Positions 18,229-63,290 of a stretch of DNA of 64,000 nucleotides are shown piece after piece. How positions within the stretch are numbered: position 1 is the first letter of the stretch; each line of letters opens with the position of its first letter. Source of the DNA: Octopus bimaculoides (taxonomy: Eukaryota); NCBI RefSeq assembly GCF_001194135.2, contig NC_068982.1, forward strand, positions 136,144,960 to 136,208,959, given 5' to 3'. The position numbers and the translations under genes are program-made. The notes under the pieces are model-generated. The model had not been told where the DNA came from. It ran no database searches and was given only the letters and a program-made list of their open reading frames with translations.

Positions 18229-18269
18229 GTGCGTGCGTGCATATATTTGCAGTGATGTTATGCATATTA

Positions 18270-18400: not shown

Positions 18401-18437
<37 letters not shown>

Positions 18438-18680: not shown

Positions 18681-18762
18681 TATGTACATATATATATGTA
18701 CGTATACACACAGACACACAAATATACACACACACACATATGCATATATGAATATACATACA

Positions 18763-29734: not shown

Positions 29735-29807
<73 letters not shown>

Positions 29808-29830
29808 CATCATCACCATCATTATTATTG
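29735..29830. repeat. (ATT)n microsatellite between SINE A fragments
   Basis: Direct reading; type A core/tail fragments at ~29,640-29,725 and ~29,830-29,945. Confidence 0.9.
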
Positions 29831-30185: not shown

Positions 30186-30255
<70 letters not shown>

Positions 30256-30361
30256 TTTTTATTATTATTATTATTATCATTATTATGGTTCAGTAGTTTT
30301 ATTTTTATAACGTGCTTTATTATTATTATCATTATTATCATTATTATTATTATTATTATTT
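30186..30361. repeat. (ATT)n tracts (3' tail/target of the adjacent LINE)
   Basis: Direct reading. Confidence 0.9.
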
Positions 30362-31762: not shown

Positions 31763-31794
31763 ATTATTATTATTATCATTATTATCATTATTAA

Positions 31795-31855
<61 letters not shown>

Positions 31856-38329: not shown

Positions 38330-39445
38330 AATGTAATAACTTGCTCTAAAAGCAGGTAGTAATTTTACCATGTCTTTATTCTTAGTACACCTTTTGAAGA
38401 GTGCAGTTCGATTTTAACAGTTTTTAATAGATATTTTCAAAGCTATATAGGAAGTGACAAAGGAGCATATTCGGTATATTTTGCTTTATGAGTTCAATAA
38501 AGGCAACGGTGCAACGGAATGTGTGAGCAATATTAATGCTGTTTATAGGGATAGGACAATAAGCATAAGCCAATATGAACGGTGGTTCCAGAAATTCCGA
38601 GCCGGAAACTATAGCCTAGAAGACGAGCCTTGTCCTTGAAGAGCTCGACGAGGACGTCCTGCGAACCCTGGTGGAACAAAATCCAATCGTAACTGTTCAG
38701 AAATTAGCAGGGATACTTGGATTTGGTCATTCAAACATTCATCATCAACTCCGTGCTATCTGAAAAGTCAGCAGATGGGAGTTAATGATTTCTACAAGCT
38801 TTTCGAGTCTAATCGCGCGCAGAGAGTGAATGTGTGCTCTTCTTTGCTGTCAAATTTCACGAATGAGCCTTTTTTTATGGACAGAATAGTGAGTGTTGAC
38901 GAGAAAGAGGATCTCTATAAAATTGTCAAGTACTGAAGATAGGGGATAGGGAAAGGAGAAACACCGGTACCCCAGGCTAAAAAAGGTCTTCACCCACATA
39001 AGTTGTTGTTATCTGTTTGGTGAGATTTAGTCCACTTTGAACTTTTAAACCCAAACGAAACGATAACAAACAAGATCTACCCCAAGCAGCTTGAGCGGCT
39101 TAAGCCAGCGCTAGTAGAAAATCAACCATCTTTGGTTTCAAGACTAAATGTGTTTTTCCATCAAGATAATCCTCAGCCACGTACAGCGAGGATGACCTTC
39201 CAAAAGCCGGAGCAGTTTGAATGGGAAACGATGTTCCACCCATCATATTTGCCTAATATTGCTCCATCTGATTATCATTTATTCCGCAGTCTTCAAAATC
39301 GTTTGGACGGAAAAAATATGAATTTGTAGACCAGGTCAGAGGAGTATTTTCGTCATGGACAAGTGAATTTTGGAACAGGAGCTTTGGAGGTCTACCAGAT
39401 AGATAGAAAAACATTGTGGAAAATGAAGGAGAGTATATTTTAGAT
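38330..39445 (+). mobile_element. mariner transposase pseudogene (D,D34D type), TIRs not found
   Basis: TKEHIRYILLYEFNKG..WFQKFRAGNYSLEDEP, DRIVSVDEK, FFHQDNPQP, HPSYLPNIAPSDYHLFRSLQN; same family as 19,255-20,182. Confidence 0.9.
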
Positions 39446-43689: not shown

Positions 43690-44160
43690 NNNNNNNNNNN
43701 NNNNNNNNNNNNNNNNNNNNNNNNNNNNNNNNNNNNNNNNNNNNNNNNNNNNNNNNNNNNNNNNNNNNNNNNNNNNNNNNNNNNNNNNNNNNNNNNNNNN
43801 NNNNNNNNNNNNNNNNNNNNNNNNNNNNNNNNNNNNNNNNNNNNNNNNNNNNNNNNNNNNNNNNNNNNNNNNNNNNNNNNNNNNNNNNNNNNNNNNNNNN
43901 NNNNNNNNNNNNNNNNNNNNNNNNNNNNNNNNNNNNNNNNNNNNNNNNNNNNNNNNNNNNNNNNNNNNNNNNNNNNNNNNNNNNNNNNNNNNNNNNNNNN
44001 NNNNNNNNNNNNNNNNNNNNNNNNNNNNNNNNNNNNNNNNNNNNNNNNNNNNNNNNNNNNNNNNNNNNNNNNNNNNNNNNNNNNNNNNNNNNNNNNNNNN
44101 NNNNNNNNNNNNNNNNNNNNNNNNNNNNNNNNNNNNNNNNNNNNNNNNNNNNNNNNNNNN
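43690..44160. other. Assembly gap (N run)
   Basis: Ns. Confidence 1.
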
Positions 44161-44334: not shown

Positions 44335-45154
44335 CGAGAGAGAGGGAGAAAGAGAGATGAACTTTTTCACTAAAGAGTCGTTATGAAATGATCAAGCCCT
44401 TATTAGCACTACCTCCATAATTCCAAATGCAAAGTAGCGGCATCCCGACTCACGTCAGTGTAACTAGTGTTTCAATATCCATACAGAATGCAATATATTT
44501 TTAGATAATCATGCAGGCGTACGCTCGTACAAATTCGGTATCTCTTATTACATTCTCGCGTTCTGTCATTCTGTCCTCTGTGAGTTACCATCTAGATTCC
44601 CCTCCACTAAAACTGTTCTGCAAATACAGGGCGAATAAATATTTATTTTCTCTCTCTCTCTCCCTCTGTCTCTCTCAATCTCCTCCTCTCTCTCTTTCAC
44701 ACACGTATATCTCACCAAATATCTCATGGTATTTTCATATTTCCTTACAACAGTTTAAACAGAATCTATATTATTGAGTAAATATCACTTTTATTTTAGC
44801 AACTTTATATGATCAATATATTAGCAAGTAAAAAAAAATACCCCCACCTTTTTTATAATGACAATACCTTTATCACCATAAACACGACATAGGAATTTTT
44901 TTCTCGATAGAACGTAACCACCATAGAAATAGGAGAAACCATCAGCTTTTAAGCAAGCACATTATACAACAGAGGGAGCCCCTATAAGTTTGTTAGGTAA
45001 ATCCTAAACACCGTCCTAAACCTGTGCAAATACATGCAGCATACAGTTGCACTAAACAAATACTACTGTACAACAAGACAAGTGGTAGGGGACACTTTTG
45101 CTAAGAAGACCTCACCCATGCTCCTAAATCCGTATGCAATAATAGAATTTAGAA

Positions 45155-45580
45155 AGGCAGCGAGCCGGTAGAGACGTTAGCACGCCGGGCGAAATGCTTA
45201 GCGGTATTTCGTTTGCCTCTACGTTCTGAGTTCAAATTCCGCCGAGGTCAACTTTGCCTTTCATCCTTTCGGGGTCGATTAAATAAATACCAGTTACACA
45301 CTGTAGTCGATATAATCGACTTAATCCGTTTGTCAGTACTTGTTTGTCTCCTCTGTGTGTAGCCCCTTGTAGGCATTAAAGAAATAAGAAACGTTAGCAC
45401 GCCGGGCGAATTGCTTAGCGGTATTTCGTCTGTCTTTACGTTCAAATTCCGCCGAGGTCGACTTTGCCTTTCATACTTTCGGAGTCAATAAATTAAGTGC
45501 CAGTTGTGTACTGGGGTCGATATAATCGATTGTCTCCTTGCCCCAATATTTAGGGTCTTGTGCCTAGAGTAGAAGAGAAT
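45155..45580 (+). mobile_element. SINE type A, dimeric form
   Basis: Two successive head-core modules ending GTGCCTAGAGTAGAAGAGAAT. Confidence 0.85.
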
Positions 45581-45697
45581 ATTAACCGCTACTTTCAACA
45601 GCAAGGTGTGCGTCACAAGACAACAGCTCACTCCGCCTTAAAACTATTCACGATCATTATATAAAACTCACTCCAGCTCAGTCACTATTTCGAGATG

Positions 45698-45950
45698 CGG
45701 AGGCGCGTAGACTAGTGGTTAGAGTGTAGGACCCATGATTATAAGATTGTGGTTTCGATTCCTGGACCGGGCGACGTTTTGCGTTCTTGAGCAATGCACT
45801 TCATTTCACGCTCTTCCAGTCCACTCAGCTAGCAAAAATGAATAATCCTACGACGAACAAGAGTCCCGTCCATGTGGTGAATATATGCACCATGAAACCG
45901 GGAAACCAGCCCTTATGAGTCGGTATGACTCGAGAAAGTAACTTTAATAT
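45698..45950 (+). mobile_element. SINE with type C head and core but a different tail
   Basis: GGAGGCGCGTAGACTAGTGGTTAG..GGTTTCGATTCCTGG head, CCAGTCCACTCAGCTAG core, CATGAAACCGGGAAACCAGCCCTTATGAGTC tail. Confidence 0.7.
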
Positions 45951-48900
45951 TTTTACTATTTTCAGATCAACAGAAAATATAATCCTTTATTCTATCTCAA
46001 CTGTTGCTTTCAGTAACACATTATGCAGTATAGAAAACTCACTCACTACCTATAAAACAATATTTTCAGAATAGCATCAGACAATTTCACTTTAACACAT
46101 TTTATATTCACAATTTACAAGAGGGATACACGACTTATATATTGTACACCACCTGAACTGCAACTTTCAGCAACACTAAATACAATATCCACCTATTTTC
46201 TTACACTCCGCCTTCACTGTTAAGCTCTATGTACGCATCTCAGAAACAGCTCTTAATTTCATAAGTCGGTAGGAGGATATACTCAAAAGTAAACCCCTCA
46301 CCGCATATTAACCGCTACTTTCATTTGCAGGAGAACATCACACCACGCCACAAATGCTACTTTCTTTGTCACTGTATAAAACTCAAGAGCAGTTATTACT
46401 CCACTTTAACTTTACCATTCCGTTGCAGGGTATGAACTTAAAGTATACCTCTCACTCCACATTAACCGCTACTTTCTGTAGCAACGACAACATTTCACTC
46501 CTTACTAACTGCTACCTTCAATATCATTGTAATCAACCCGCTTCAACTCAAACGCTATATAGCATAGAAAATATAATCTCTAACTTTGCCGCAACTAACG
46601 CTTTCAGTAAAACCGTATACCGAACAGGAAAATATTTCACTCGCCGAAAACTAATTTTTTTTTTTTCATAATAACGCGATAAATCACAAGAGTATTTTAT
46701 TTTACACATACAACTAATCTTTTTTTATTCAATATCAAAGCGTACAGAGATGTGTTATTTTCATATTAAAAGATACTGTGTAATACAGCATAAGAACACG
46801 TTATCTCATTCCAATTACATTACTACATTGCAATAACTATTTACTCCGACTAAACCGCCGCTTTCATAATCACATTATACCACATAGCAACAACGATTTA
46901 TTTCACCGCTACTTCAGAATGACAGTATACAGCACACGACTAAATACACTGATTTCATTTCAACTGTAAACTTCATCGCACAACGCAACTCAAACACTCA
47001 CTCTATCTTAGATACTACTTTCGGCAGCTTCATTGATATATAACACAATAAAAGGCCTTATACCATCACGACCACTACTTTCAGAATCACGTTATACATC
47101 ACAAGAGGACTTCCCTTATTTCATTTTCATCTGAAATATCATAACGTGTGGCTCAATGTACAATGCAGGAATAATTCACTCTTCAAATTAAAAGCTTCTC
47201 TTATAATATAGCACCAGAACACACGTGGATTCATACAACTTGGATAAATGCATTTCGAAACCTCAGTAATATTTTCTTACATCAGCTTAATACTTACCAT
47301 TTCTTAATAGAAACATTTCTTATACTTTACCATAAATATTACGTTAGTGTCAATCTATACAACTAAGTAACACATTCTGATAATACAACTTTCCCTGCTG
47401 TTTCACTACTACTGTATACAACACCATAAGCGTCAGTACTATCGTATACAGCGCAGTAATGCTTTCTTACAACTCTAACGTAACAACTGTCTTCTCTATA
47501 TCAACACAGTAGCACTTTCTTATACTCCAGCATAACAGCCGCTTTAAGTGTCATTGTATATAACACACACAGTATGGATTTCCTGACTCCGCCTTAGCTA
47601 CTACTTTCAGCATCACCGTATGCAACACATTGACGCTTTCTTACACTCCACCTTTGTTGCCTTCATTATGATTGTCAATCAACAACACAAACACATTGTT
47701 AAATTACAACATTACTAATTTCATTATTATTGTAAATAACACAGAACGCTTTTTCTCCAACTTCATTTAAACTGCTATTTAACATAACAGTAAGTATAAT
47801 ACAGTAAGGAGCTTTCTCATACTCCATCTGAAATGCTCCTTTCAGTATCACTGTTTAGAAATCAGAGTCAACTCACACTCCACCTAAACTTCAATCTTCT
47901 TTAGCAAGGCATACGGCTTAACAAAATCTCTCACTCCACATTAACCGCTACTTTCATTAGCGCATAATATATATCCCCATAAAACGTCTCATTCCACCCA
48001 TACTGCTACTTTCACTATTAGTATATACAGTTCAGTGCAACTCAGCCGCTACCTTCAGTATACACCATAAGAAGACTTCTCACTCCACATTAAGCGCTGC
48101 TTCTATTAGCAGAGTATATGTATCACATGAAAACACCTTACTCCACCTTAACTGCTATTTTCACTATCGGAGTAAACAACTCGATGCACTTCTACTGCTA
48201 CTTACAATAATAAAGTGTACAGCATGGGAAAAAATCTATCACTCTCTTTAATCCGATATATTTAGAATCTCATATACAACGTATGGTCACATGATGTTAC
48301 ACACTGACAATTTCCTCCACTCCAGCTTAGCTATCAGTGTCACTGATACAGTATACGAGAGGGTAATGCTTTCTCGCACTCCGACTTAACTGCTACTGTC
48401 AATATAACTGTATACGACTCAGAACCAGCTCGCACTCCAACAAAAAGTCAATTTTCATTAGCAAGGTACACAGCATAAGAGAATCTGTCACACTACATTA
48501 ACTGCAACTTCCAGCAGCGCAGTATATAATCGCCGGTAAAATATTTTCATAAGTGTAGTAGATATCAACGGAAAAGATCTCACTCCATTCCAACTGCTAC
48601 TTTCTCTCTAGGTTTATACAATTCGCTGCAGCTCAACTCCTACTTTCTGTAAAGATGTATGCAGCACTGGAAGATTTTTCTATACCTGTAAACGGATATA
48701 TTCAGATTCATACTATAAAACAAAATAGCACATAATATCACACGCAAACTTATATTTGCTATTCAATATCCCAGTTTGCAAGACAGAGACGTGTTGTTTT
48801 ACATTAATATTACCTTTTATAATTTAACACCAGAGCCCATATTAAAGATTACTGTTGGAAGCTACGTTAGAATCACTATTAACAAGAGTGAAATCATTAT

Positions 48901-49587
48901 TTGCTTCCACTAAACTGCTACTTCCATAATCGCAGTATATCACAAGGAGGCAAAGAATCATTTAACTCCAACTTAACTGCTACATCTAGAATTGTTGTAT
49001 GAAGCGAAGCACTAACTCTAGATCTACTAACTTTAGTTAAATTGTTCTTTACGTATACAGCACATCAGAATCCCTCGCTACATTCTAAACACTAAACCTA
49101 AACCCAACAAAATCTCTCACACCAACGTAAGGCCTTCGTTCTCAATCAGCTAAAACAGCGCAAAACAAAATCAATTCATTTAATCTTCACTTAACCTAAA
49201 TGTATATATCATATCTAAATATACATTGTAGAAATAATATTCTTTAATGATTTATTATAAGAATACTCATGACTCAATTCCACATGGACGACTGTATATA
49301 AAATCCATTTTTCATTTAGAATCATTGATTGCTATACAGAAGACTTTCGTACACAGTACCCTAAAGCCCAGATGCACTTTCTTATACTCCACCTCAATTT
49401 CCACTTTTAGTATAGCTTGGTATAATACCGATTTACCTTAACTACTAATTTCAGTGTCACCTAAGACAGAAGAGCAATGCTTTCTTGCACCTCAACTCAA
49501 CTGCCACTTTCACTATCCATATAATCAGCACATTACGCTTTCACATACCCCATCTTAATTGCTACTTTTTGTAATAATATATGCAGT

Positions 49588-49759
49588 AGGCAGGAGTGGC
49601 TGTGTGGTAAATAGCTTGCTTATCAACCACGTGGTTCCAGGTTCAGTCCCACTGCGTTGCCCCTAGGACAAGTATTTTCTACTATAGCTTCGGGTCGACC
49701 AAAGCCTTGTGAGTGGATTTGGTAGACGAAACTGCACGAAGCCCGACACACACACACAC

Positions 49760-49811
<52 letters not shown>

Positions 49812-50025
49812 CGCGCGCTTGTGTGCCTGTGTTTGTACCCCCACCATCGTTTGACAACCGATGCTAATTTGTGTCCGGTTTCGTAAATAGCGGTTCTGCA
49901 AAAGAGACCCGATAGAATAAGTACTAAGCTTACAAAAAATAAGTCCTGGTGTCGATTTGTTCGACTAAAGGCTGTGCTCCAGTACAGTCGCACTCAAATG
50001 ACTGAAACAAATAAAAGAATAAAAG
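49588..50025 (+). mobile_element. SINE type B inserted in the array
   Basis: Full head GGCAGGAGTGGCTGTGTGGTAA, internal microsatellite and tail; splits an array monomer. Confidence 0.85.
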
Positions 50026-50139
50026 TACAGTAACGCTTCCTCACACTCCACTTAAATGTGACTTTCAGTATCACAGAAAATAACTTAGAATCAGCCCTTA
50101 TTCTATCTGAATCTCAACAATCACTAGCACAGTATAGAC

Positions 50140-50384
50140 CAGGGTTTCTCAACGGGAGCCAAAGCATTTCTTAGGGGCCATAACATATTAAACATTGTTG
50201 TTGCTGGTATCCTTTCGTCTCAGGAGACAATGGAGTTGCGCATAAACTACTCTTTCTAAACTTTCTACTTCTCTAGATGCCTTAAGCTGCGGGACAGAGT
50301 GGGGATAAAACCTTAGCATGGGAGCCATAGCAATTTCGCATTGCATTAAAGGAGGCCACGGCCAGCATGAGGTTGACAAAACTG
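50140..50384. mobile_element. hAT (Charlie-like) MITE
   Basis: Perfect 8-bp TSD GTATAGAC (50,132-39 and 50,385-92); termini CAGGGTTTCTCAAC..GTTGACAAAACTG. Confidence 0.85.
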
Positions 50385-50657
50385 GTATAGACTATAAGCA
50401 AACCTCTCACTCCATAGTAACCGCTACTTGCATTAGCGCAGTATTTAACATCAGAAAACGTTTCACTCTACCGATACTGCTACTCTCATTATCAACATTT
50501 AGAACTTACTGCATCTCAACTGTACTTTCAATAACACGGTATACAACGTAGGAAAACCTTTCACGTTCCATAATCAAATATTTCCAGTATCATGTTATAA
50601 ATTACTAGGACGCTTCATTGCAGATACATTTTTCTTCTACTCAATATTACAGTTTAC

Positions 50658-50846
50658 GACGCCGGGAAAAAATGCTTAGCGGCATTTCGTCCGTCTTTAC
50701 TTTCGGAGTTCAAATTCCACCAAGGTCGACTTTGGCTTTCATCCTTTCGGGGCCAATAAAATAAGTACTAGTTGAACACTGGGGCTGATATAACCGACTT
50801 ATCCCCGCTCCCGAAATTGCTGGACTTGTGCCAAAATTTGAAATGG
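50658..50846 (+). mobile_element. SINE type A, 5'-truncated
   Basis: Core and tail present; 14-bp TSD ATATTA(C/T)AG(T/G)TTAC at 50,644-57 and 50,847-60. Confidence 0.8.
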
Positions 50847-53615
50847 ATATTATAGGTTACAAGACAAAGATACATCTTATCCACATTAAACGCTATCCCT
50901 ATAATTAAACACAAGAATACACATTATATTATTCCAAATATTCTACTACATTTGGAATCACTATTTACAAGATACAAAGTGAACACTGACTCATTTGTTA
51001 CAATCGTAATCACAAACTATCTTATACAAACAACATACTATTTAGCACCAATTTAACTGCTACATTTAAACCCACAGAACCATATATATTAACTTCACCT
51101 CAGTTACTACATTCAGTGGATAGCATAGCAAATCCGCTCTCTCTAATCTAAACACTAACTTCTGGTGTATAATATTGAGCAATTGGAAATATCTTACGTC
51201 ATCATAACCGCTACTTTCAGTACCACGGTGTACATCACAGAAATATTTTCTTTTTTTATCCTCTCCTGAAATATAATTATTGCTATCTCAGTGAACAGCA
51301 CAAAAAGATTTCTGACTTGAAAGTAAGGAATGCACTAGAACACATATGACTTCATGCTACTTGGACTAATGCATTTAGAAGCAACATAGCCATTTTCACT
51401 GAAACGAGCTTTGTCACATTTACTATCATCGTGCACAACACGGTAACTCATTCTAATAGTCTACCTTAACTGCAACATTTAGTTTTACTCTTTGCAACAC
51501 GTTTACGCATTTTCCTCCTCCGCCATAACTGCCACTTTTAGCATCGTTGCATTAGAAACAGTAACAATCAACTTATGTTACGTTCAGTACCATTGTATAA
51601 AATTCTGAATCAAATCGTATTTCACTTAAACCTTAATAATCATTAGCTCAGTATACAGCATAGCTAAATCTCTCACGACACGTTAACCGCTAATTTCTCA
51701 GGCGCAGGTTATATCCCCAGAAAATTACTAAATTTATAGAACACTGTAAAGCAGAATTCATCTATGTAATAGAATAATGCGTTCTTACACTCCAAACAAC
51801 TGCTACTTTAAATATTTTGAGCATACGTTAGCAACTCCCTTCACACCACCTTAAACTCAACAATATTTAGTTAGGTAACACCTCTCACTCCACGATACCG
51901 CTACTTTCATTAGCGGAATAGATATCACCGTAACACCTCTCACTCCACCCTAACTGCCACTTCCATTATACATGTATACAACGCACTACACTTCTAGCGC
52001 TACTTTCAGTAACACAATATATAATACAGGAAACTCTTTCACGGTCCAATTTCACTGCTATCTTTACAATCAAAGGAAGCAAAATAGGTCTAAATACTCT
52101 GACTCCACCTCAATTGTTACTTTTGGTGTAAAGTGTAGCACAGCTTCTCTCTACACTCCAATCATTAATTTCGATAGCATAATATAAAGCAAAGAAAGAC
52201 CTCATATCACGAAACGCGACGCTTTACGCGATACTTTCAATGTCATGTTATGCATCACACGACTAGGAAAATATCATAATCAGAACTTCAGTGTGCACTA
52301 CAGGAACAACCCTGGCTTCAGTTTAATAAACACTGGTGGTATATATAATACAGTACCAGAAATCACGTGGTTTTATTCAAACTGGACTACATTTAGAATT
52401 GATATAAGAATGTTCACTAAATCCAGCTCCAATGTTACATTTAGACTCACTGTATACAAATCATTTGCATCTTCGTACACCCCGCTTTAGCTGCTACTTT
52501 TATTATCACTGTGTACACAACAGTAACGCTTTCTTACGCACCAACGTAACAGCTATCTTCTGTCTCAACACAGTAGCACTTTCTTATACTCCACCATAAC
52601 CGCCACTTTCCGTATCACTACATGCAACACAGTAAGGATTATCAGCACTCCGCCTTAGTTTCTACTTTCAACATCGAATACAACACAGGAATGCTTTCCT
52701 ACACTCCAACTTAGCTGCTACCATCGCTATCATTGCTAACGGCGGATAACGATTTCTCACGCTCCAGCTGAACTGCTACTTTCACTTTCACTGTATAAAA
52801 CTCACAAGCTACTCTCACTCCACCTAAACATTAGCATTCATTAGCATAGTATACAGCATAAGTAAACATTAACCGCTACTCACATGAGTACAGTATATAT
52901 CACCATAAAACGCCTCCCTTCCTCCTAACTGCCACTTTCAGTATAAATGCAAATCCCTCTCTACACCTCAGCTGCTACTTTCAGTAACATAGTCTACGAC
53001 ACACGGAAATCTTCCTCTCTGTTTTTCAATATTTTCCGAAACACGTTATAAAATCCAAGAGCACATTATTTCGATACATATTCACTTTACTGTACAATAT
53101 CACAGTTTGCAAAACAAAGACTTGACATATTTCATATTAAATACTATTCCTATAATACTCCGCAAAAAACATGAATATTATTCCAGTTACAATACTGCTT
53201 TATGAATTATTATTTACAAAACAGAAACCGTGTTCTCTGTGCACTCCAACTGAACTGCCTCTTCTATAATCAGTGACTGTCAAACTACATATTAATTCAC
53301 TCCAGCGTAACTGCTGTCTTTAGAATTATAGGATGCAATATAGGGTCCAACATAATCTCGACACCTCAGTTACTGCTTTCGTTGGACTGCATAGCAAATT
53401 CTCTTTCTTCAATCTAAACACTAATTTCTGGTACGTAACATGCAGAAATTGAAAATTTCTTTCGCGATTATAATCGCTACTTTCAGTGTCGTGTTGTACA
53501 CCACAGAAAATCTTTATTTCGTCCACATCTCAGATACTGTAGTCACTATCTCAGTGTACAGTACAGGAAAATATATTCCTTCAACTTAAAAAGAAAACAA
53601 AAATGTATTCTATAT

Positions 53616-54045
53616 TCTTTTCTACTCTAGACACAAAACCCGAAATTTGGGGGTGGGGGCCAGTTGATTAGATTGACCCCAGTACGCAACTGGTACTTAA
53701 TTTATCGACCTCGAAGGATGAAAAGCAAAGGCGACCATGGCGGAATTTGAACTCAGAACATAAAGACAGACGAAATACTGCTAAGCCTTTCGCCAGGTGT
53801 GTTAACGTTTCTTATTTGTTTATTGCCCACAAGGGGCTAAACATAGAGGGAATGAACAAGGACAGATAAAGTGATTAAGTCGATTACACTGACCCCAGTG
53901 CGTAACTGGTACTTAATTTATCAACCCTGAGAGGATGAAAGGCAACGTCGACTTCGGCGGAATTTGAGCACAGAACGTAACGGCAGACGAAATACCGCTA
54001 AGCATTTCGCCCGGCATGCTAATATTTCTGCCAGCTCGCCGCCTT
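53616..54045 (-). mobile_element. SINE type A, dimeric form
   Basis: Two modules; flanked by (A/G)AATGTATTCTATAT at 53,601 and 54,046. Confidence 0.85.
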
Positions 54046-54060
54046 GAATGTATTCTATAT

Positions 54061-54275
54061 ACTTTTCTGCTCTAGGCACAAGACCCGAAAGTTTTTGGAA
54101 GGGGGCCAGTCGATTAGATCGAACCCAGTACGCAACTAGTACTTAATTTATCGATCCCGAATGTATGAAAGGCAAAGTCGACCTCGGCGGAATTTGAACT
54201 CAGAACGTCACGGCAGACGAAATAGCGGTAAGCATTTCGTCCGGCGTGCTAACGTTTTTGCCAGCTCGCCGCCTT
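54061..54275 (-). mobile_element. SINE type A, short form
   Basis: Flanked by the same 15-mer at 54,046 and 54,276. Confidence 0.85.
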
Positions 54276-55323
54276 AAATGTATTCTATATTAGAAGACGC
54301 ATGTCTTCATTCTTCTCGGACTAATTTATTTAGGTTATCATCATAACCATTTCCATTAAAACGAAATTCTCCGTTACATTTAGAATCACTGTAAACAAAA
54401 CTATCAATTTCTTACACCCCCAGGTTCATAACCACGTTCATTATCATTAGATATAACAGATGTATTGCTTTATTACACTCCAACATGACTTATCTTCCCT
54501 ATCAATACAGTAGCATTTTCTTCATACTCCATCTTAACTGCCACTTCAATTATTATTGCAAGCGTCACAATAAAAATGGGGTTCTCTCCACCTTAACTAC
54601 TACTGCTTCCAGTGTCTCTTTATGCAACACAGTAGCACTTTCTTACGGTCTACCTAACTTCTACTTTCTGTATCAATATAGTGGCACTTCTTTACGCACC
54701 ACCATAACTTCTACTTTTAGTATCACTGTATCCAACGCAGTAATAATTACCTGCATCCCGCCTTAGCTACTAGCTTCAGTATCATCGTATATAACACAAA
54801 CTGTTGTCTTACACTACACCTTAACTGCAACTGTCATCATAAGCTCATAAAATACAGTAACCATTCCTCACACTACAATTTAACTGTTACTTTCCATATC
54901 ATTGTATAAAATTCAGAATCAACTCTTATTTCCCTTAAACTTCAACAAATATTAGCATGCTTTCCAGCATAAGAAAACCCCTCACTCCACATTAACCGCT
55001 ACTTTCATTAATACAGTATATATATATATCCCTGCCAACGTCTCACCCCACCGATACTGCTACTTTCATTATCACTGTATACAACTCACTGCAGCTCAAC
55101 TGCTACTTTCACTAACACGATATACCGTTCAGGAAAGTCTTTCACGCTCCCTAATAAAATATTTTCAGTATCACGTTATATTCAACAAGCGCGCATTATT
55201 TCAGATACGATATTTATTTTCTATTCAATAACATAATTTAAAATCCAGAGACATGTTTTATTTTATTCGAATCTCTATCCTTATAATGCATTACAGCAAA
55301 CAATTTTTCTTTAAATTTGAGTA

Positions 55324-55544
55324 CAGCAATCCCTCGCCATATCACGGTTCACCTATCGCGGTTTATTATTTAAGCTTACGTCGATTCCTCCGTGGTGTTG
55401 TATTGCATTTATAATAAAATAAATATATACAAATTATAAAAATACTTTACAAAAATATATACAGTACAGTACTGTTTCTACTTCGTGTATTTTTACCTAT
55501 TGCTGGGGGTTTTGGAATGATAGTCGATAGTCGAGGGATTACAA
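55324..55544. mobile_element. pogo/Tigger-like MITE
   Basis: TA-CAGCAATCCCTCG..CGAGGGATTACAA-TA termini with an AT-rich interior. Confidence 0.65.
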
Positions 55545-57387
55545 TATTCTATTAAGAATCACTATGTACAAAACGAAAATTGTGCACTGCGACTAAACTG
55601 TTACAATCATAATCACCTTATACCACAGCATTTTACTATAATTTAGATTCACAGGGGCAGTGATATTGCCTTTATCTCAATAGCTACAGTCAGTGTACAA
55701 CATAGAAACACTTCTCACTCCACACTAAACGTTATTTTCGGTATCATAATATGCAGCTAAGGAAAAGTTCTCATGCAATGAAATGCGTTACCACACATGC
55801 TACTTTCAGAGTTACGTTATAAATCACAGAAACATCAATTGCATCTTCACTAGTAATATCTTAATCATTACCTTTCTGTATACTACCTACAGAAACATAT
55901 CTAGCTTGACCTTAATGACTGGTACGTGATCCCATTATCCTTTAACTACTACATTTAGGATCTATGTAAGCATGTTAACTAGATCCAGCTCCATCGTTAC
56001 ATTTAGTATCCCTATCAACAAAACAGTAACACTTCCTTATACTCCATCTGAACCAATACTTTCACTTTCAACATATACACAACATAATACCCTCTTACTC
56101 TCCACATTAACTGCTACCTTCTGTTTCAGATCAGGAAGGCTCTCTCACACCCCAACTTAAATACCGCTTTGACGTTCTACTAAATGCAACATAATGACTA
56201 TTTCCGCACTCCACCCTCGCTATAGGTTTCACTATCATCGTATACAACACTGTAATGTTTTCTCATTCTCCAACTTATCTGCTACCTTCATTACCAATAT
56301 AAAGAACACAGAACGCGTTCCTACACTCCACCATAACCACTACTTTGGTTATCACTATATACAGTTCAGTAACACCTTCTCACACTCCAACATAACTGCT
56401 ACTTTCACTATCAGAATATACAATTCACTACTTTTCTACTGCTACTTTCAAATTTCAACCTATGCAGCACAATAAAACATTTCACTCAACATAATCCGTT
56501 ATAATTAGAATCACGTGTAAACCAAAATAGATCTTTTTCATAAATCATATTTTTTATATTCAATATACGTTTATTGCAAAAAGAAGCGAGACTAATTACT
56601 TATTAACATACGCTAATTATAATACAGCAAAATAGCAAACATTTTATCATCCCAATTAAAGTACATTTAAAATTGCTATTTATGACAAAAATCGTTTACT
56701 TCATCTAAATTGCCACTGTTATATCAACCGGTTACCACATAAAAACAACGTAATATTTCAGTCGACTTTCACCTATACTCACAATGTACATTAACAAATC
56801 AGATTACACCGCAGCAACTACTTTCGGGAGAATAATATACAACACATTAGAAGGTCTTATGTCACTATAACCACTTCATTCCATCACGCGATCAATTTAT
56901 TTAATTTTCACCTGAAATATTATAGTCTATACCTCATTGTACAGCGCAGAAATTTCTCGTTTCATTTTAAGCACCGCTTTTATGATATCGTTGAAGAACA
57001 TACATGCCTTGATTCCAGTTTAACGAGTGCTTTTAGAAACAACAGGAAAACATCCTATCACTCCAGCTTAATAATCACATTTAGGATCACAAAAAGACCT
57101 TCTCATACTCCAACGTGGCTACTCCTCTTAAAATAATGCTGTGCAATAGTAGAACTCCATCTCAACGACATTTTAACTGATTCCTTGTGTATATTACGGA
57201 GCAAACCCTCATACATAAGCGAGATACGTGCTCGGTTATGTATTAGGGTTTGCTCATGTTCTTTATTCATCTAATGGCACTATACTGCTCAAAACATATT
57301 CTTTTTTTTCTATCGTTACCATTATATACATGATTCCTATATACAAGGAAAAAGATGTCTTCCTTTCTCTCTTATAAATACTAGTAT

Positions 57388-57798
57388 TTACTCTTTTACT
57401 CTTCTACTTGTTTCAGTCATTTGACTGTGGCCATGCTGGAGCACCGCCTTTAGTCGAGCAAATCGACCCCAGGACTTATTCGTTGTGACCCTAGTACTTA
57501 TTCTATCGGTCTCTTTTGCCGAACCGCTAAGTTACGGGTCCGTAAACACACCAGCATCGGTTGGTTGTCGAGCGATGTTGGGGGACAAACACAGACACAC
57601 AAACACACACACATATATACATATACATATATACTTTCAGGTCTTCTTTCAGTTTCCGTTTACCAAATCCACTCACAAGGCTTTGGTCGGCCCGAGGCTA
57701 AAGTAGAAGACACTTGCCCAAAATGCCACGCAGTAGGACTGAACGCGGAAGCATGTGGTTAGTAAGCAAGCTAATTACCACACAACCACTCATCCACC
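57388..57798 (-). mobile_element. SINE type B inserted in the array
   Basis: Reverse complement of full type B. Confidence 0.85.
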
Positions 57799-59709
57799 TT
57801 TAGCATAATATTATACAATACAAGAAGAAGCCTTTTTCCGGATACTTACCTTCTTCATTCCGCATTATTCTATACATCACGTTAATACCTTTCACTCCAC
57901 AGAAAGCAACTTCCACAAACTCTATGACCATCATATCAATACATTCAACCAATCAATCGCTATTTCTAATTTCACGATCTCTATATACGTTATAGAAACA
58001 CTTTCATTTGTCTCCATCAACTATGACTGCCAAAATTAGAACATCCTACAGAGAGCTACCTCTCACTCTGTGTCACCTGCTACATTTAGTATCACAGTGT
58101 ACATGTCAAGATCTCATTCTGTATCTCCACCTTAATTGCTACTTCGAATCCTACATTAGAAGAAACACATCACTTCAGCTTAACTGCTAATTTCATTATC
58201 ACATTGTACACATCAATAAAACCTTTCTATCTGCCTTAGCCGTTACTTCCACATTTCCGTTATACTTCACACAAACATATTTTCGTGCCCACCTAAAGTT
58301 TATCAGCTGCTTCTCAGTGTACAACGCTGTGAGACTTCTTATTTCATATCAAACTCTCCTTTTATGGTACAACACAACACCTAGACAGCTACACTATGAT
58401 TATAATACACAAGACAGGAACTCGCTCTCCAAATAACTGTTACGTTTATCAGTCTATGATGTAGCATGCAGTAACAGTTATACTTAAAATTCTGCGGTAA
58501 CAATTACATTTCAAATTCTTTACCGCCCCTCAACTACTATTTTCAGAGTCTCTCTCTACATAAGTATTGTTTCAAAACCATTGTATACAGCACACTATAG
58601 TTAACGGTTACTGCTCCATAACCGCTGCCTTTCTTCATTCATTCTAGACTAAATGTTACGTTCATAATCACGATATACAGCAAAGGAACACCAATCACTT
58701 CAACTGTACTGCGATTTCCACCACAACATACAGTGGCAATATACCGTTCACTCCATCTACATCTTAAATTGTACAGTATGCTGCATAGAAACACTCTTCC
58801 CTCCACCTTAGCTGCTACCTTCACATGAACGGTACATTTCATAGGAGACCACCTCAAGCATTCTTCTCAGTGCAAAATATACATCTCATATACACGTTAT
58901 TTCCTCGCCGCATTTGCTGTTATACTCAGTATCACTGGATACAAAACAATGACACATATTGCATCGTAAGCATTAGTATAAGGTAGTATAATAAAATATT
59001 CTACTGTACTTGCTATTATTATATACCAAACGGAAATGCTTTCTTTTTCATTTTTTTCAACCGTTAAGGCACAATCGCTGTTACAACGCGAAGATAGCTT
59101 GTTTTACTTCAGCTCAACAACATTAACTGCATTTCAATTGATATTTTCAGATTCATGTTGTATACTACTTGTAGGCCTAATAACCTCCTTTAAGCATCTC
59201 ATTTCAAGATCACGACATGTTGCAGAAAAAAAAAAACAAACACGTTCATTTACTCCATCGTAACTGCTATTTACGTAATTACTATATACAAAGAAAGTGT
59301 GACATCGCTCACGTTATTTTAACAAACAGTTATAGTGAAACTGTGTACGTCACAAGAATCTCTCCCTCAGCACAACAGTTATATTCAATATGACAGCATG
59401 CAACGCATGAATACCATTCGTTCACACTAACTTCATCTCTTCTTTGTATATCACAGTAAAACTCTACCCCACTCCACCTTATTCAGTATTTTTGGATGAC
59501 AAGTTACAACACGAGTAGAGGCCTTTTACGTTACTTTTCTATTTATATTGCAGAATCACCTTCATTGATATTTACGGTGTGACTCTATACAAAGGAGGAA
59601 CAATTTCTCTCACTTCCGTATAATTACTAATTACTATTTCACAGGTAAACAGATGCACAATGACCTCTCAATTATATAAAATATATATAAAACCATTATT
59701 CTATGCTAA

Positions 59710-60055
59710 TTTAGTTAATTGTGACATAGAAATTTAGAGTGCCCATGTGATAACTGTAAACCTACTTGAACTTCTTGAACTTTTCTGTACTTTCTTTGTA
59801 CTTTCTGCTTTTTTCTATTGTCATCTTTTCTTACTGTTTCCGCCTCCATTTCCACCCACTCTCCACTCTGCTTCAACCATCCTACCCATACTCCGTACCA
59901 TTTCTGTGTTCCTTTCTGTTGAAGAGCGTAGGCTCGAAACGTAAAAGATTTTCTCACTTCCCGAACGTTAAACTAATACATCTGTTTGTTGCTTACACAC
60001 CTGTCTTCCGTCTTTTTGTTTTGTTAGTTTGTTTTATTTTGTAAATTCCAACTAT
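59710..60055 (+). mobile_element. Penelope-like terminal-repeat fragment
   Basis: CT-rich segment unrelated to the array, carrying a minimal hammerhead motif as is typical of PLE pLTRs; truncated by the gap. The family call is inferred. Confidence 0.5.
59912..59947 (+). ncRNA. Minimal type I hammerhead motif with core variant CUGUUGA
   Basis: CTTT-CTGTTGA-A-GAGC-GTAG-GCTC-GAAAC-GTA-AAAG: stem I 4 bp, stem II 4 bp, palindromic ACGT helix III. Confidence 0.6.
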
Positions 60056-60976
60056 NNNNNNNNNNNNNNNNNNNNNNNNNNNNNNNNNNNNNNNNNNNNN
60101 NNNNNNNNNNNNNNNNNNNNNNNNNNNNNNNNNNNNNNNNNNNNNNNNNNNNNNNNNNNNNNNNNNNNNNNNNNNNNNNNNNNNNNNNNNNNNNNNNNNN
60201 NNNNNNNNNNNNNNNNNNNNNNNNNNNNNNNNNNNNNNNNNNNNNNNNNNNNNNNNNNNNNNNNNNNNNNNNNNNNNNNNNNNNNNNNNNNNNNNNNNNN
60301 NNNNNNNNNNNNNNNNNNNNNNNNNNNNNNNNNNNNNNNNNNNNNNNNNNNNNNNNNNNNNNNNNNNNNNNNNNNNNNNNNNNNNNNNNNNNNNNNNNNN
60401 NNNNNNNNNNNNNNNNNNNNNNNNNNNNNNNNNNNNNNNNNNNNNNNNNNNNNNNNNNNNNNNNNNNNNNNNNNNNNNNNNNNNNNNNNNNNNNNNNNNN
60501 NNNNNNNNNNNNNNNNNNNNNNNNNNNNNNNNNNNNNNNNNNNNNNNNNNNNNNNNNNNNNNNNNNNNNNNNNNNNNNNNNNNNNNNNNNNNNNNNNNNN
60601 NNNNNNNNNNNNNNNNNNNNNNNNNNNNNNNNNNNNNNNNNNNNNNNNNNNNNNNNNNNNNNNNNNNNNNNNNNNNNNNNNNNNNNNNNNNNNNNNNNNN
60701 NNNNNNNNNNNNNNNNNNNNNNNNNNNNNNNNNNNNNNNNNNNNNNNNNNNNNNNNNNNNNNNNNNNNNNNNNNNNNNNNNNNNNNNNNNNNNNNNNNNN
60801 NNNNNNNNNNNNNNNNNNNNNNNNNNNNNNNNNNNNNNNNNNNNNNNNNNNNNNNNNNNNNNNNNNNNNNNNNNNNNNNNNNNNNNNNNNNNNNNNNNNN
60901 NNNNNNNNNNNNNNNNNNNNNNNNNNNNNNNNNNNNNNNNNNNNNNNNNNNNNNNNNNNNNNNNNNNNNNNNNNNN
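60056..60976. other. Assembly gap (N run)
   Basis: Ns. Confidence 1.
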
Positions 60977-61583
60977 ATATATATCATACATTATCTCAAA
61001 TATGTATACTATATAATATATATATTATACTTTATCTCAAATATGTATAGTATATATATATTACATTATATATACTATTACGATATATAAATTCACAATG
61101 AATTTTTTAATCATAATGTATATCACACGAAATTATTTCACTTCGTATTGAACCAGTTGCTGTCACAACGTAAGGTATAATTTTACCCTACCACATACAA
61201 GACAGGAACATATTCTCTCTCCATGAACCCTTATGTTCATCTGTCTACACCACAACAAACTATAGCTGTTACAATTAGAACTCTACTAAAACTCTGGAAA
61301 ATTTACTGCCCTGCATTTAAACTACTATCTTTATATTCGTCTCTTATATCACCGTAAGTCCGGTAGATAGAACATGAGTTCCTTTCACTGGAGCTTAAAT
61401 GCAGTTTTCAAAATCATTGTTAATACAACACAGAAACATATTCTATCTGGTTAATACGTATGTATTAAGTTCACCCTATTTTCCTCAATTTGACTGCTAC
61501 TTAGAGAATATGTGTATACAATACATACTGAATTGTCCGTAGGCTACCTTAGTCGCTGCCTTTATAATATCTGTACACATGAT

Positions 61584-62203
61584 TAGGCGGCGAGCAGGTA
61601 GAAACGTTAGCCCGTCGGGCGAAATGCTTAGCAGTATTTCGTCTGCCGTTACGTTCTGAGTTCAAATTCGGCCGAGGTCGACTTTGCCTTTCATCTTTTC
61701 GGGGTCGATAAATTAAGTACCAGTTACGCACTGGGGTCGATATAATCAACTTAATCCGTTTATCTGTCCTTGTTTGTCCCCTCTGTGTGTAGCCCCTTGT
61801 GGGCAGTAAAGAAATAGGTATTTCGTCTGCCGTTACGTTCTGAGTTCAAATTCCGCCGAGGTTGACTTTGCTTTCATCCTTTCGGGGTCGATAAATTAAG
61901 TACCAATTACGCACTGAGGTCGATGTAATCGACGTAATCCTTTTGTCTGTCTTGTTTGTCCCCTCTATGTTTAGCTCCTTGTGGGCAATAAAGAAATAAG
62001 AAATGTTAGCACGCCGGGCGAAATACTCAGTGGAATTTCATCTGTTTTTACGTTCTGAGTTTAAATTCCGCTGAGGTCGACTTTGCCGTTCACCCTTTCG
62101 GGGTCGTCTTAAGTAATTAAGTAACAGTTGCGTACTGGAGGTCGATCTAATCGATTGACCCCCGTCTCCCAAAATTTCGGGCCTTGTCCCTAGAGTAGAA
62201 AAG
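61584..62203 (+). mobile_element. SINE type A, trimeric form
   Basis: Three core modules; 18-bp TSD AATATCTGTA(C/T)ACATGAT at 61,566-83 and 62,204-21. Confidence 0.88.
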
Positions 62204-63139
62204 AATATCTGTATACATGATGGTTACCCCTACCATCATGTGACTTGAACCGCTACCCACATTCACTCCAATTTAACCGCCACTAACGATCTCTCCAACT
62301 TAACTGCTATTCACGTTCAATCCACCTTAGACTTATCTTTCAGCCCACTCCACTTTATATACAATTTTAATTCTGACAATATATAGAAGAATGCCTTTAG
62401 CTCCAACTGAACAGCAACTATCACAATCGCGTGGTTACGATACAGTAAAGCCTCCAGTCAATCGATCTTAGCTGTACCTTTCACAATCCCAGTATACTAC
62501 ATAGAAACACACCTCTCTTTCAATTTCATTTTCTCTTTCTTTCTCTCCCTCTTTCTCTCTCTTTTTCCATTTAGATTCATTATATACAACACAGAAATGA
62601 GGTCTCCTCAACCGCTATTTTCAGAACGCCAGTATTCAGAGCAGAAAATCCTTCCATTGCACTTTAAGTGCTACTAATAGTATCACTGTATGAATCACAG
62701 GTATTCTCTCACGTGACAATTTTCTCTGTCACGTCAAAAACAACGAACGCAACTTATTTCTTTTCCACGTTATCTATTATATTCTCTATGAAAAAAATTC
62801 ATTTCCCCTTAAACACTATTCTTATAATTTAGCACAAACGTACACATTATTTCAACATTTACAATCGCTACATGCAAGAGAGGGAATACTCGTTCTAAAT
62901 TCTCTGTTGTTTTCTCTGTGATACTATTTACTCTCTCGCTCTATCTCAACCACTGCTTTCTCGATTACAGCATATGAAAATCTTTCACTCCATCGTATAC
63001 GTTGCGTGCAAAATCACCGTACACAAGACTGTAATAATTTCTGTCTTTTTTACAGTCTATTTTAGAACCGCGCTATGCAGCCCTGGGAGTTCATTGTATT
63101 AAGACTTTACAGCTATTTTCATTATCACTTTGTGAAAGA

Positions 63140-63290
63140 CATTGAGCTGAGTTCAAATTTCGCCGAGGTGGATTATGCTTTTCATCCTTCCCAGGTCGAT
63201 AAAATAATTACTAGTCAAACACTAGGGTCAATGCAATCAACTTCCTGTCCCTTCAAAAAGTACTGGCTCTGTGCCAAAATTTGAAACTGT
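63140..63290 (+). mobile_element. SINE type A fragment
   Basis: CTGAGTTCAAATTTCGCCGAGGT..GCTTTTCATCCTTCCCAGGTCGATAAAAT..GTGCCAAAATTTGAAAC. Confidence 0.65.

What the first reader, a model, noticed from the sequence alone, without database searches (positions are those of the whole stretch)
45580..63060. 17.5-kb fossil higher-order tandem array built on a ~59-bp monomer
Seen: a degenerate ~59-bp monomer (several measured at 56-59 bp) recurs throughout. Specific monomer variants and non-monomer blocks recur in fixed order: marker A at ~46,744, 48,783, 50,864, 53,114, 55,245, 56,586, 58,329 and 62,801, and marker B 320-410 bp after A (net of insertions) at ~47,128, 49,190, 51,260, 53,520, 55,845 and 56,905. 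A third marker appears twice in some units, implying nested duplications. The units are heavily diverged, so homogenisation has stopped, yet no ORF or TE hallmark explains them. Three monomers make 177 bp, near a nucleosome repeat length. Inference: an ancient satellite with HOR structure (for example a retired centromeric or heterochromatic array), or a tandemly amplified ncRNA or regulatory unit. It would probably evade repeat libraries.
Basis: partly seen in the sequence, partly recalled or inferred. Interest (0 to 1): 0.7.

Follow-up and report, generated by a model that had tools for sequence, protein, structure and literature searches.

The report
Decayed octopus tandem-repeat array
This stretch is an old, non-coding block of head-to-tail 56–59-bp repeats that was copied again in ~2-kb chunks, then left to decay and be invaded by jumping elements; it is real, but it is ordinary "fossil" repeat DNA in an octopus-type genome with no sign of a present function.

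Summary
A degenerate 56–59-bp monomer (core CTCCACCTTAACTGCTACTTTCAGTATCACTGTATACAACACA) occurs 63 times at E≤1e-3. Every copy is on the + strand and inside 45.6–63.1 kb. Autocorrelation peaks at lags 56 and 59 (z 9.6 and 5.7), although TRF misses the array.

Multi-monomer blocks recur in fixed order as about five 2-kb units (46.7–56.6 kb). Units are 70–79 % identical to each other; neighbouring monomers are only 51–59 % identical. That is a true but very eroded higher-order repeat. The tails (45.6–46.7 and 58.3–63.1 kb) keep only scattered monomers.

About 2.4 kb of the span is later SINE or other transposable-element (TE) insertion, one with a 16-bp target-site duplication. The assembly gap lies in non-monomeric sequence outside the core, so nothing depends on it.

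No ORF, Pfam domain, Rfam family or conserved RNA fold was found. An 81 %-identical copy of one unit in an unrelated sequencing run shows equal divergence in core and spacer, which fits neutral decay. A SINE pseudo-ORF matches Octopus bimaculoides proteins.

Best reading: a low-copy minisatellite-derived macrosatellite, amplified roughly 35–55 My ago and now inert. A centromeric origin is untested and unlikely, and an ncRNA array is not supported. Interest is low.

The parts
45152..45595 (.). Composite (dimeric) SINE abutting the left edge of the array
   Evidence: 11 copies elsewhere in the window, in both orientations. Same family as 53603-54276 and 61579-62218.
45596..46704 (+). Left eroded tail (U0): scattered monomers, no significant periodicity
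   Evidence: 8 profile hits, 6 at E<=1e-3. Autocorrelation z 0.9. Only 7-36 % covered by matches to U1-U5.
46705..48738 (+). Unit U1 (2034 bp): marker A 46705-46801, marker B 47120-47259, then monomer blocks with an internal 557-bp-offset duplication
   Evidence: 22 monomer hits.
48739..50854 (+). Unit U2 (1455 bp net), carrying two inserts: a dispersed element with an internal (TG)n at 49561-50025 and a single SINE at 50659-50854
50855..53084 (+). Unit U3 (2230 bp) with a nested duplication of the distal blocks. 52383-53100 is the segment with an 81 % homologue in Logan contig L031.
53085..55201 (+). Unit U4 (1443 bp net), 91 % covered by matches to U3 at about 70 % identity
53603..54276 (-). 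Composite SINE retroposed into marker B of U4, flanked by the 16-bp target-site duplication AAATGTATTCTATATT
   Evidence: Joined flanks align across the junction to uninterrupted U3 (78.5 %), U1 and U6. Marker B is split into 53517-53590 and 54273-54333.
55202..56559 (+). Unit U5 (1358 bp, shortened)
56560..58282 (+). Unit U6: weakly homologous (mainly marker B 56901-57038 against U1). Still periodic (z 3.4). Carries a dispersed-element insert at 57384-57831.
58283..60055 (+). Right eroded tail (U7): an A-like marker at 58283-58377 and 7 monomer hits, with no unit-level homology
60056..60976 (.). Assembly gap (N run). Flanks are non-monomeric and continuity is unknown.
60977..63146 (+). Distal eroded tail (U8): 9 weak monomer hits (2 at E<=1e-3), a 42-bp marker-A-like match at 62809-62850, and a composite SINE at 61579-62218
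52762..52817 (+). Best-preserved single monomer (56 bp; profile E 2.8e-9)

Best explanation
This is a low-copy, non-coding, fossil tandem array in an octopod genome. I infer the following history.

(1) Replication slippage or unequal exchange built a 56-59-bp minisatellite.
(2) The monomers diverged from one another.
(3) Unequal crossing-over between misaligned multi-monomer segments amplified a ~2.1-kb block of about 36 monomers, including two now barely recognisable 'marker' stretches, into at least 5-6 tandem units. Smaller nested duplications (about 224-560 bp) occurred as well.
(4) Homogenisation then stopped. Since then the array has accumulated substitutions and indels at the neutral rate and has absorbed SINE and other TE insertions.

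It most likely has no sequence-specific function today.

Shown directly: the repeat anatomy, its single orientation, units being more alike than monomers, TE insertion into pre-existing units, and the absence of coding or structured-RNA signal.

Inferred: the mechanism of amplification, the dating, the neutrality and the low copy number.
For: ANATOMY. Periodicity at lags 56 and 59 has z 9.6 and 5.7. There are 63 monomers at E<=1e-3, all on the + strand and all within 45.6-63.1 kb. Units are 70-79 % identical while monomers are 51-59 % identical. That gap is the defining pattern of a higher-order repeat, but far below the identity of an actively homogenised array.

NESTED DUPLICATIONS. In the homologue L031, a 224-bp four-monomer duplication is 81.6 % identical between its copies, so unequal exchange operated on multi-monomer registers.

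TE INSERTION. A composite SINE with a 16-bp target-site duplication interrupts a unit. The empty site is preserved in paralogous units. About 2.4 kb of inserts are tolerated.

NOT CODING. 56 and 59 are both 2 mod 3, and the consensus trimer carries two stops in one phase. No ORF of >=110 aa lies in the array. No Pfam family is found in six frames over two units or over the tails.

NOT A STRUCTURED RNA. Rfam gives nothing on the monomer and there are no tRNAs. RNAalifold predicts 0 pairs on both strands.

NEUTRALITY. Comparing L031 with window 52479-53100, the core is 84.3 % identical and the spacer 83.1 % (Fisher p 0.74). Transitions to transversions are 59:41.

RARITY. One hit in the word-indexed search of 5.8 billion proteins, and the same single hit in the exhaustive 1.84-billion search. 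The metagenome scan gave only chance matches.

HOST. A SINE pseudo-ORF is 84 % identical to Octopus bimaculoides proteins.

DATING. I used the octopus repeat calibration JC 0.09 = 25 My (PMC13282606). This gives units at about 34-53 My, the L031 split at about 26 My, and the SINE copies at about 15-32 My. The order is consistent: amplification, then lineage split, then SINE invasion.
Against: The constraint test rests on a single 630-bp comparison. It would miss weak or position-specific selection.

The 43-nt core is clearly better conserved among monomers than the 13-16-nt spacer. That could reflect past selection rather than alignment or indel effects.

Copy number in the genome was not measured. 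No eukaryotic genome collection was searchable at the DNA level, and the ORF-based proxy is insensitive. None of four window ORFs tested is itself in the collection.

The organism and library type of run SRR11869391 are unknown. If it is RNA-seq, the array is transcribed in that animal.

No TE nucleotide library (Dfam/Repbase) was available, so derivation from a described element cannot be excluded.
Confidence: 0.74

Rival explanations
1. The ~2.1-kb unit is, or derives from, a non-autonomous transposable element that carries an internal minisatellite. Examples are Helitron/Helentron- or MITE-associated tandem arrays (well known in molluscs) or an SVA-like VNTR element. That element was then tandemly duplicated in place.
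For: The genome is extremely TE-rich. The window holds SINEs, a mariner fragment and LINE fragments, and 66 % of O. vulgaris is annotated as repeats (PMC13282606). The units contain non-monomeric 'marker' stretches between monomer runs. TE-borne internal tandem repeats are a common seed of satellites (established knowledge).
Against: The units and monomers have no copy elsewhere in the other 46 kb of the window, on either strand. Genuine dispersed elements here have 6-40 copies. No Pfam TE domain is present. No inverted termini or inverted copies were detected other than known inserts. Only one related ORF exists in 15 billion predicted proteins. The marker stretches are themselves picked up by monomer-like profiles, so they look like degenerate monomers.
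Confidence: 0.1
2. This is a relic of a once large, homogenised satellite (a former centromeric or pericentromeric/heterochromatic array). It shrank and decayed after the centromere moved or the satellite family was replaced.
For: The higher-order organisation is met, with units more alike than monomers. The array has a single orientation. There is a weak ~3-monomer (167-173 bp) sub-periodicity near nucleosome repeat length. Cephalopod centromeric DNA is essentially undescribed in the searchable literature, so nothing contradicts the idea.
Against: Only about 14 kb net, of which about 10 kb is clearly structured. No second array or related monomers occur in 64 kb. The family is virtually absent from ORF collections. 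Flanking DNA looks like ordinary TE-rich euchromatin-type sequence. No positional or chromatin data were available.
Confidence: 0.07
3. This is a functional array. Either it is a transcribed unit (lncRNA, piRNA-cluster-like precursor or tandem small-RNA genes), or it is a cis-regulatory or protein-binding array in which the conserved 43-nt core is a binding site, for example for one of the many octopod C2H2 zinc-finger proteins.
For: The core is more conserved among monomers than the spacer. Strand asymmetry is strong (C 23.7 % against G 13.1 %; skew -0.2 to -0.4). The locus has persisted for >=25 My in two lineages or paralogues. The homologous contig was assembled identically in about 5 sequencing runs of unknown type. 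The - strand consensus dimer folds somewhat better than shuffles (z -2.4).
Against: There is no conserved or covarying structure in real monomers on either strand. No Rfam family matches. The splice-acceptor-like CTTTCAG is not conserved at the G. Core and spacer diverge equally between homologues. SINE insertions and unit truncations are tolerated. The strand skew is simply the composition of the monomer consensus (13 C against 4 G in the core).
Confidence: 0.06

Closest known systems
Higher-order-repeat (HOR) satellite arrays, e.g. primate alpha satellite
   Same: Head-to-tail monomers in one orientation. Multi-monomer units are more similar to each other (70-79 %) than neighbouring monomers are (51-59 %). 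Nested or variant units arise by unequal exchange.
   Different: Active HORs are 95-100 % identical, span hundreds of kb to Mb and are centromere-associated. This array is about 14 kb, 20-30 % diverged between units, pierced by SINEs, apparently low-copy, and has no positional or chromatin evidence.
Mouse major (gamma) satellite: a 234-bp unit built from four ~58-60-bp subrepeats (from established knowledge, not tested here)
   Same: Nested periodicity built on a ~58-bp subrepeat, with a longer unit made of diverged subrepeats.
   Different: No sequence relationship was tested or is expected. The mouse satellite is megabase-scale, homogeneous and pericentromeric. Here the higher unit is ~2.1 kb and the array is a small relic.
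Minisatellites / VNTRs (10-100-bp units, 0.5-30-kb arrays)
   Same: Unit length, array length, non-coding nature, and origin by slippage or unequal exchange.
   Different: Typical minisatellites are recognisably homogeneous and callable by TRF. This one is too diverged for TRF and has an added ~2-kb level of organisation.
Macrosatellites (kb-scale tandem units such as D4Z4 or DXZ4)
   Same: Tandem units of about 2 kb at a single locus.
   Different: Known macrosatellites are highly homogeneous, often GC-rich and sometimes coding or transcribed. These units are AT-rich (about 37 % GC), decayed and show no ORF.
TE-associated tandem arrays of molluscs (Helitron/Helentron- or MITE-linked satellites; established knowledge)
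   Same: A molluscan genome, with tandem arrays embedded in TE-rich DNA.
   Different: No TE termini, no TE protein domains, and no dispersed copies of the unit within the window. Monomers of those families are usually about 150-190 bp.

Membership tests
HOR-organised satellite DNA | Monomers arranged head-to-tail in one orientation | tested here: met
   113 of 113 profile hits within the array are on the + strand. Spacing modes are 56, 59 and 58 bp.
HOR-organised satellite DNA | Multi-monomer units more similar to each other than adjacent monomers are | tested here: met
   Units are 70-79 % identical. Monomers at distance 1-4 are 51-59 % identical.
HOR-organised satellite DNA | Long, highly homogenised, high-copy arrays | tested here: not met
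   About 14 kb net, and TRF-negative. Only one related ORF in 15 billion proteins. Genome-wide DNA copy number could not be measured directly.
HOR-organised satellite DNA | Centromeric or heterochromatic location (CENP-A, H3K9me3, cytology) | not testable with these tools
   No chromosomal coordinates or chromatin data were available.
Minisatellite / VNTR | Tandem unit of 10-100 bp in an array of 0.5-30 kb, non-coding | tested here: met
   56-59-bp unit, with an 11.6-kb periodic core and 17.5-kb footprint. The repeat phase carries stops. No Pfam family.
Macrosatellite | Tandem repetition of a kb-scale unit | tested here: met
   Five to six units of 1.36-2.23 kb with collinear blocks and markers.
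TE-derived / TE-internal tandem array | Unit bounded by TE termini, or dispersed copies of the unit with target-site duplications | tested here: not met
   No copy of the unit or monomer outside the array in the window, and no inverted copies. No search of a TE nucleotide library was possible.
TE-derived / TE-internal tandem array | Remnants of TE proteins | tested here: not met
   Six-frame Pfam scans over U1-U2 and U6-U8 found 0 families at E<=0.1.
Tandem ncRNA gene cluster (miRNA / snoRNA / tRNA / 5S) | Match to an RNA family, or a conserved or covarying secondary structure per unit | tested here: not met
   Rfam gathering mode gives 0 hits. Sub-threshold hits fall only on microsatellites. 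ARAGORN finds 0 tRNAs. RNAalifold finds 0 pairs on both strands.
piRNA cluster | Dense strand-biased piRNA production | not testable with these tools
   No small-RNA data were available.
Tandem-repeat protein gene / pseudogene | Period divisible by 3, with an open frame or recognisable domain | tested here: not met
   The periods 56, 58 and 59 are not multiples of 3. The consensus has two in-phase stops per 177 nt. No Pfam family.

The most novel reading that the evidence does not exclude
The array is a syntenically retained octopod locus with a role. One version is a relic of, or seed for, centromere/heterochromatin identity in a clade whose centromeric DNA is undescribed. The other is a transcribed or protein-bound array whose 43-nt core is a recognition site, for instance for an expanded C2H2 zinc-finger protein. 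In that case its persistence for >=25 My in two lineages would not be mere neutrality.
Probability: 0.06. Interest if true: 0.5.

Novelty: new member of a known kind. Interest (0 to 1): 0.2.

Why it matters
The value is mainly practical. The array shows that kilobase-scale, strongly diverged tandem arrays in octopod genomes escape TRF-type detection. They would therefore be left as "unique" or "unknown" sequence in repeat annotations; recent work already puts octopus repeat content at about 66 %.

The locus also offers a small, datable record of events: minisatellite expansion, then higher-order amplification, then a lineage split, then SINE invasion. That record could help calibrate repeat turnover in cephalopods.

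It does not open a new biological question unless genome-wide mapping shows that the family marks centromeres, or that it is transcribed or bound.

Tried and rejected
1. Coding repeat. Rejected: the periods are not multiples of 3, the consensus has in-phase stops, there are no long ORFs, and Pfam is empty.

2. Array of splice sites or micro-exons. The core contains a branch-point-like CCTTAAC, then CTTTCAG, then GTATAC. Rejected: the G of CAG and the GT are poorly conserved among 45 monomers.

3. miRNA, snoRNA or tRNA array. Rejected. The sub-threshold Rfam miRNA hits all lie on (TG)n/(TA)n microsatellites inside TE inserts.

4. Relatives in metagenome contigs. The 30 loci found with a two-12-mer pattern are all chance matches in unrelated short-period repeats. 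L022 and L030 have a ~58-bp period but share only about 20 nt with the monomer.

5. Exact-ORF look-ups of four window ORFs. None is on record, so the window's own assembly could not be reached that way.

6. P0001 as a probe, and an exhaustive profile search. Both returned only P0001.

7. Identifying run SRR11869391 from the literature. The only text hit was an unrelated accession.

8. A 9-mer offset histogram for a clean 2-kb period. It was noisy, because units differ in length and carry nested duplications. Block-wise BLAST and marker profiles were more informative.

9. The marker-B profile drifted and also picked up marker A and monomer runs. This suggests the 'markers' are themselves degenerate monomers, not foreign sequence.

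Full report
**Gap first, as instructed.** The N run at 60056-60976 lies between two eroded tails of the array. The 200 bp to its left are C/T-rich unique sequence. The sequence to its right is an AT-rich 41-bp tandem repeat at 60977-61070. Neither flank is monomeric and no alignment bridges the gap. Monomers lie on the + strand on both sides. Like the other five gaps in the window, it abuts simple sequence. Continuity and true distance are therefore unknown. The well-structured core (46.7-58.3 kb) lies entirely to the left, so no conclusion depends on the gap.

**Is the monomer real?** TRF at minimum score 30 reports no 56-59-bp array. Base-match autocorrelation of 45580-60055 against block shuffles does peak at lag 56 (z 9.6) and lag 59 (z 5.7), with smaller peaks at 58, 167 and 173. 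A control region shows none of these.
- I seeded a profile from five adjacent monomers and iterated it with nhmmer. It converged on a 43-nt core, CTCCACCTTAACTGCTACTTTCAGTATCACTGTATACAACACA, followed by 13-16 variable bases.
- It hits 113 sites at E<=1, 63 at E<=1e-3 and 28 at E<=1e-5. Every hit is on the + strand and within 45581-63141. At E<=0.1 there is nothing on the - strand or in the other 46 kb.
- Spacings cluster at 56, 59 and 58 bp, plus 43 bp for a recurrent truncated monomer type.
- The profile was trained on this window, so absolute E-values lean in its favour. The strand and location exclusivity, the independent autocorrelation, and a 14-mer count of 22 against 0.01 expected do not depend on that training.

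**Higher-order structure.** Self-BLAST mixes two signals.
- The first is dispersed 200-670-bp elements, present in both orientations across the window. Inside the finding they occupy 45152-45595, 49561-50025, 50659-50854, 53603-54276, 57384-57831, 61579-62218 and 63147-63287.
- With those masked, the remaining signal is + strand-only matches of 150-670 bp at 64-78 % identity, at offsets of 2.1-2.3 kb and multiples. An example is 52520-53156 against 54629-55287.
- I cut the array at marker A. Units U1-U5 (46705-56559; 1.36-2.23 kb net) cover 21-91 % of each other at 70-79 % identity. U6 is only weakly related. U0, U7 and U8 have no unit-level homology.
- Monomers within runs are 51-59 % identical. 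Units are therefore more alike than monomers, which is the diagnostic property of a higher-order repeat, but at a level that shows homogenisation stopped long ago.
- A monomer triplet (56-61 bp, then 43 bp spacing) recurs at 47934, 50410, 51897, 52867, 54985 and 56326, twice in some units. This confirms nested duplication.
- Periodicity by sub-region is significant only for U1-U2 (z 5.3), U3-U5 (z 5.8) and U6 (z 3.4). The tails give z of 0.9-1.6.
- Net of 2.4 kb of inserts and the gap, the footprint is about 14.2 kb.
- A 3-monomer sub-period is only hinted at. Lags 167/173 give z 4.3/3.4, and identity is 0.59 at distance 3 against 0.51 at distance 1.

**The inserts are later arrivals.** The composite SINE at 53603-54276 is flanked by the 16-bp direct repeat AAATGTATTCTATATT. 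When the two flanks are joined, they align straight across the junction to the uninterrupted marker-B regions of U3 (78.5 %), U1 and U6. A pseudo-ORF through the same SINE family (61552-61845, - strand) is 84 % identical to annotated Octopus bimaculoides proteins.

**What it is not.**
- *Coding sequence.* There is no ORF of >=110 aa. The periods 56 and 59 are both 2 mod 3, and the consensus trimer has two in-phase stops per 177 nt. Six-frame Pfam scans of U1-U2 and of U6-U8 give zero families at E<=0.1.
- *Known RNA.* Rfam gathering mode finds nothing. In E-value mode the only hits are sub-threshold miRNA models on (TG)n/(TA)n tracts. There are no tRNAs.
- *Structured RNA.* The + strand consensus dimer does not fold better than shuffles (z -0.2). 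The - strand does slightly (z -2.4), through a short palindrome. In real monomers, RNAalifold predicts no pair on either strand (45 and 30 sequences).
- *Splice-site array.* The branch-point and acceptor-like look of the core fails because the AG is not conserved.

**Relatives elsewhere.** No eukaryotic DNA collection was searchable, so I used indirect routes.
- A two-12-mer scan of metagenome contigs returned only chance matches.
- The pseudo-peptide encoded by the consensus trimer found one ORF among 5.8 billion: P0001, 159 aa, E 1e-8. It sits on a 1122-bp Logan contig assembled identically in several runs (SRR11869391, SRR11869394 and others).
- That contig, L031, matches window 52479-53100 at 81 % over 634 bp. 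This is better than any unit-to-unit match inside the window. L031 is therefore the orthologue or closest paralogue of the distal part of U3, and the units had already diverged before the two copies split.
- L031 carries its own SINE fragment and another insert at sites that are empty in the window. It also has a private 224-bp (4-monomer) duplication whose copies are 81.6 % identical.
- In the L031-to-window alignment, monomer-core positions are 84.3 % identical and spacer positions 83.1 % (Fisher p 0.74). Transitions to transversions are 59:41. There is no detectable constraint on the part of the monomer that looks 'conserved'.
- Re-querying with P0001, and an exhaustive HMMER profile search of 1.84 billion representative proteins, returned only P0001. 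This is weak evidence for low copy number. It is weak because none of four window ORFs tested is itself in that collection.

**Rough dating (inference).** I used the octopus repeat calibration quoted in PMC13282606 (JC 0.09 ≈ 25 My and 0.2 ≈ 56 My; the O. vulgaris / O. bimaculoides split is 13-33 My). This gives:
- unit-to-unit divergence of about 34-53 My;
- L031 against the window of about 26 My, compatible with a congeneric orthologue;
- SINE copies of about 15-32 My;
- monomer-to-monomer divergence of >=80 My, which is saturated.

The order is coherent: minisatellite first, then higher-order amplification, then lineage split, then SINE invasion.

**Interpretation.** The best-supported account (about 0.74) is a low-copy minisatellite that was re-amplified as ~2.1-kb multi-monomer units by unequal exchange. 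It then ceased to be homogenised and now decays neutrally while absorbing retroposons. The strong C>G skew (C 23.7 %, G 13.1 %) is simply the composition of the monomer in a single-orientation array.

The rivals are:
- a TE-borne internal tandem array (0.10), which has no termini, domains or dispersed copies here, though no TE nucleotide library could be searched;
- a relic of a large centromeric or heterochromatic satellite (0.07), which is untestable here and disfavoured by size and rarity;
- a functional transcribed or protein-bound array (0.06), for which there is no structure and no differential constraint, and in which inserts are tolerated.

**Comparison with known kinds.** The array works like, and meets the structural definition of, a higher-order-repeat tandem array, a minisatellite and a macrosatellite. 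It fails the 'long, homogeneous, high-copy' criterion of classical satellites. Its centromeric status cannot be tested. Architecturally it recalls the mouse major satellite (234 bp built from ~58-60-bp subrepeats; this is from established knowledge and was not tested). Literature searches found no described octopod satellite of this kind.

**Verdict.** The thing itself is an ordinary fossil tandem repeat: a new member of a known kind, and of low interest unless genome-wide mapping or expression data show otherwise.

Noticed in passing
window 38640-39326 (+); related copy 19335-20105: Decayed Tc1/mariner-type transposon. The stop-free segment 39024-39326 matches Pfam Transposase_1 (PF01359; E 4e-6, above the gathering score). 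A second copy at about 78-80 % identity lies 19 kb upstream.
   Followed up: partly
window 9837-10350, 18267-18683, 49561-50025 (+), 57384-57831 (-): A second dispersed ~450-bp element family carrying an internal (TG)n/(CA)n microsatellite. Two copies are inserted in the array in opposite orientations. This family is the source of the spurious sub-threshold Rfam miRNA hits.
   Followed up: partly
window 45152-45595, 53603-54276, 61579-62218; also about 17329, 20761, 21755, 27134, 33850, 43350: An octopod SINE family, often present as dimeric or trimeric composites. At 61585-62218 there are three head-to-tail partial copies. Its pseudo-ORF is 84 % identical to O. bimaculoides 'uncharacterized proteins', which suggests those gene models contain SINE sequence.
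   Followed up: partly
window 30422-30710 / 31641-31797 (-), and 16383-16673: A C-terminal fragment of a non-LTR retrotransposon reverse transcriptase (…IPIVIGALG…) straddles the assembly gap 30711-31640. An inverted 87 % copy lies at 16383-16673. Next to it are ~90-bp repeats at 29735-29828, 30187-30286 and 31763-31853 (89-95 % identity) with long ATT/ATA-type runs.
   Followed up: no
window 3473-4035, both strands: A relatively GC-rich (0.41) segment with stop-free frames of >=180 aa on both strands (183 aa on +, 181 aa on -). It has a CCHC-knuckle-like motif on the + frame, no Pfam hit, and is not on record as a called gene. Possibly a degraded retroelement gag region.
   Followed up: partly
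window gaps 5981-6632, 23782-24624, 26586-27032, 30711-31640, 43690-44160, 60056-60976: Most of the six assembly gaps abut microsatellite or low-complexity sequence, such as (CA)n, (TA)n or AT-rich repeats. A 72-bp 98.6 % duplicate (22878-22949 against 23710-23781) ends exactly at a gap edge, which may be an assembly artefact.
   Followed up: no
L031 1-91 and 1083-1122: The Logan homologue of unit 3 is bounded by a SINE fragment on one side and a different unrelated sequence on the other. Both lie at positions that are uninterrupted in the window, so the two copies have independent insertion histories. L031 also has an internal A15 run replacing about 10 bp of the window sequence.
   Followed up: partly
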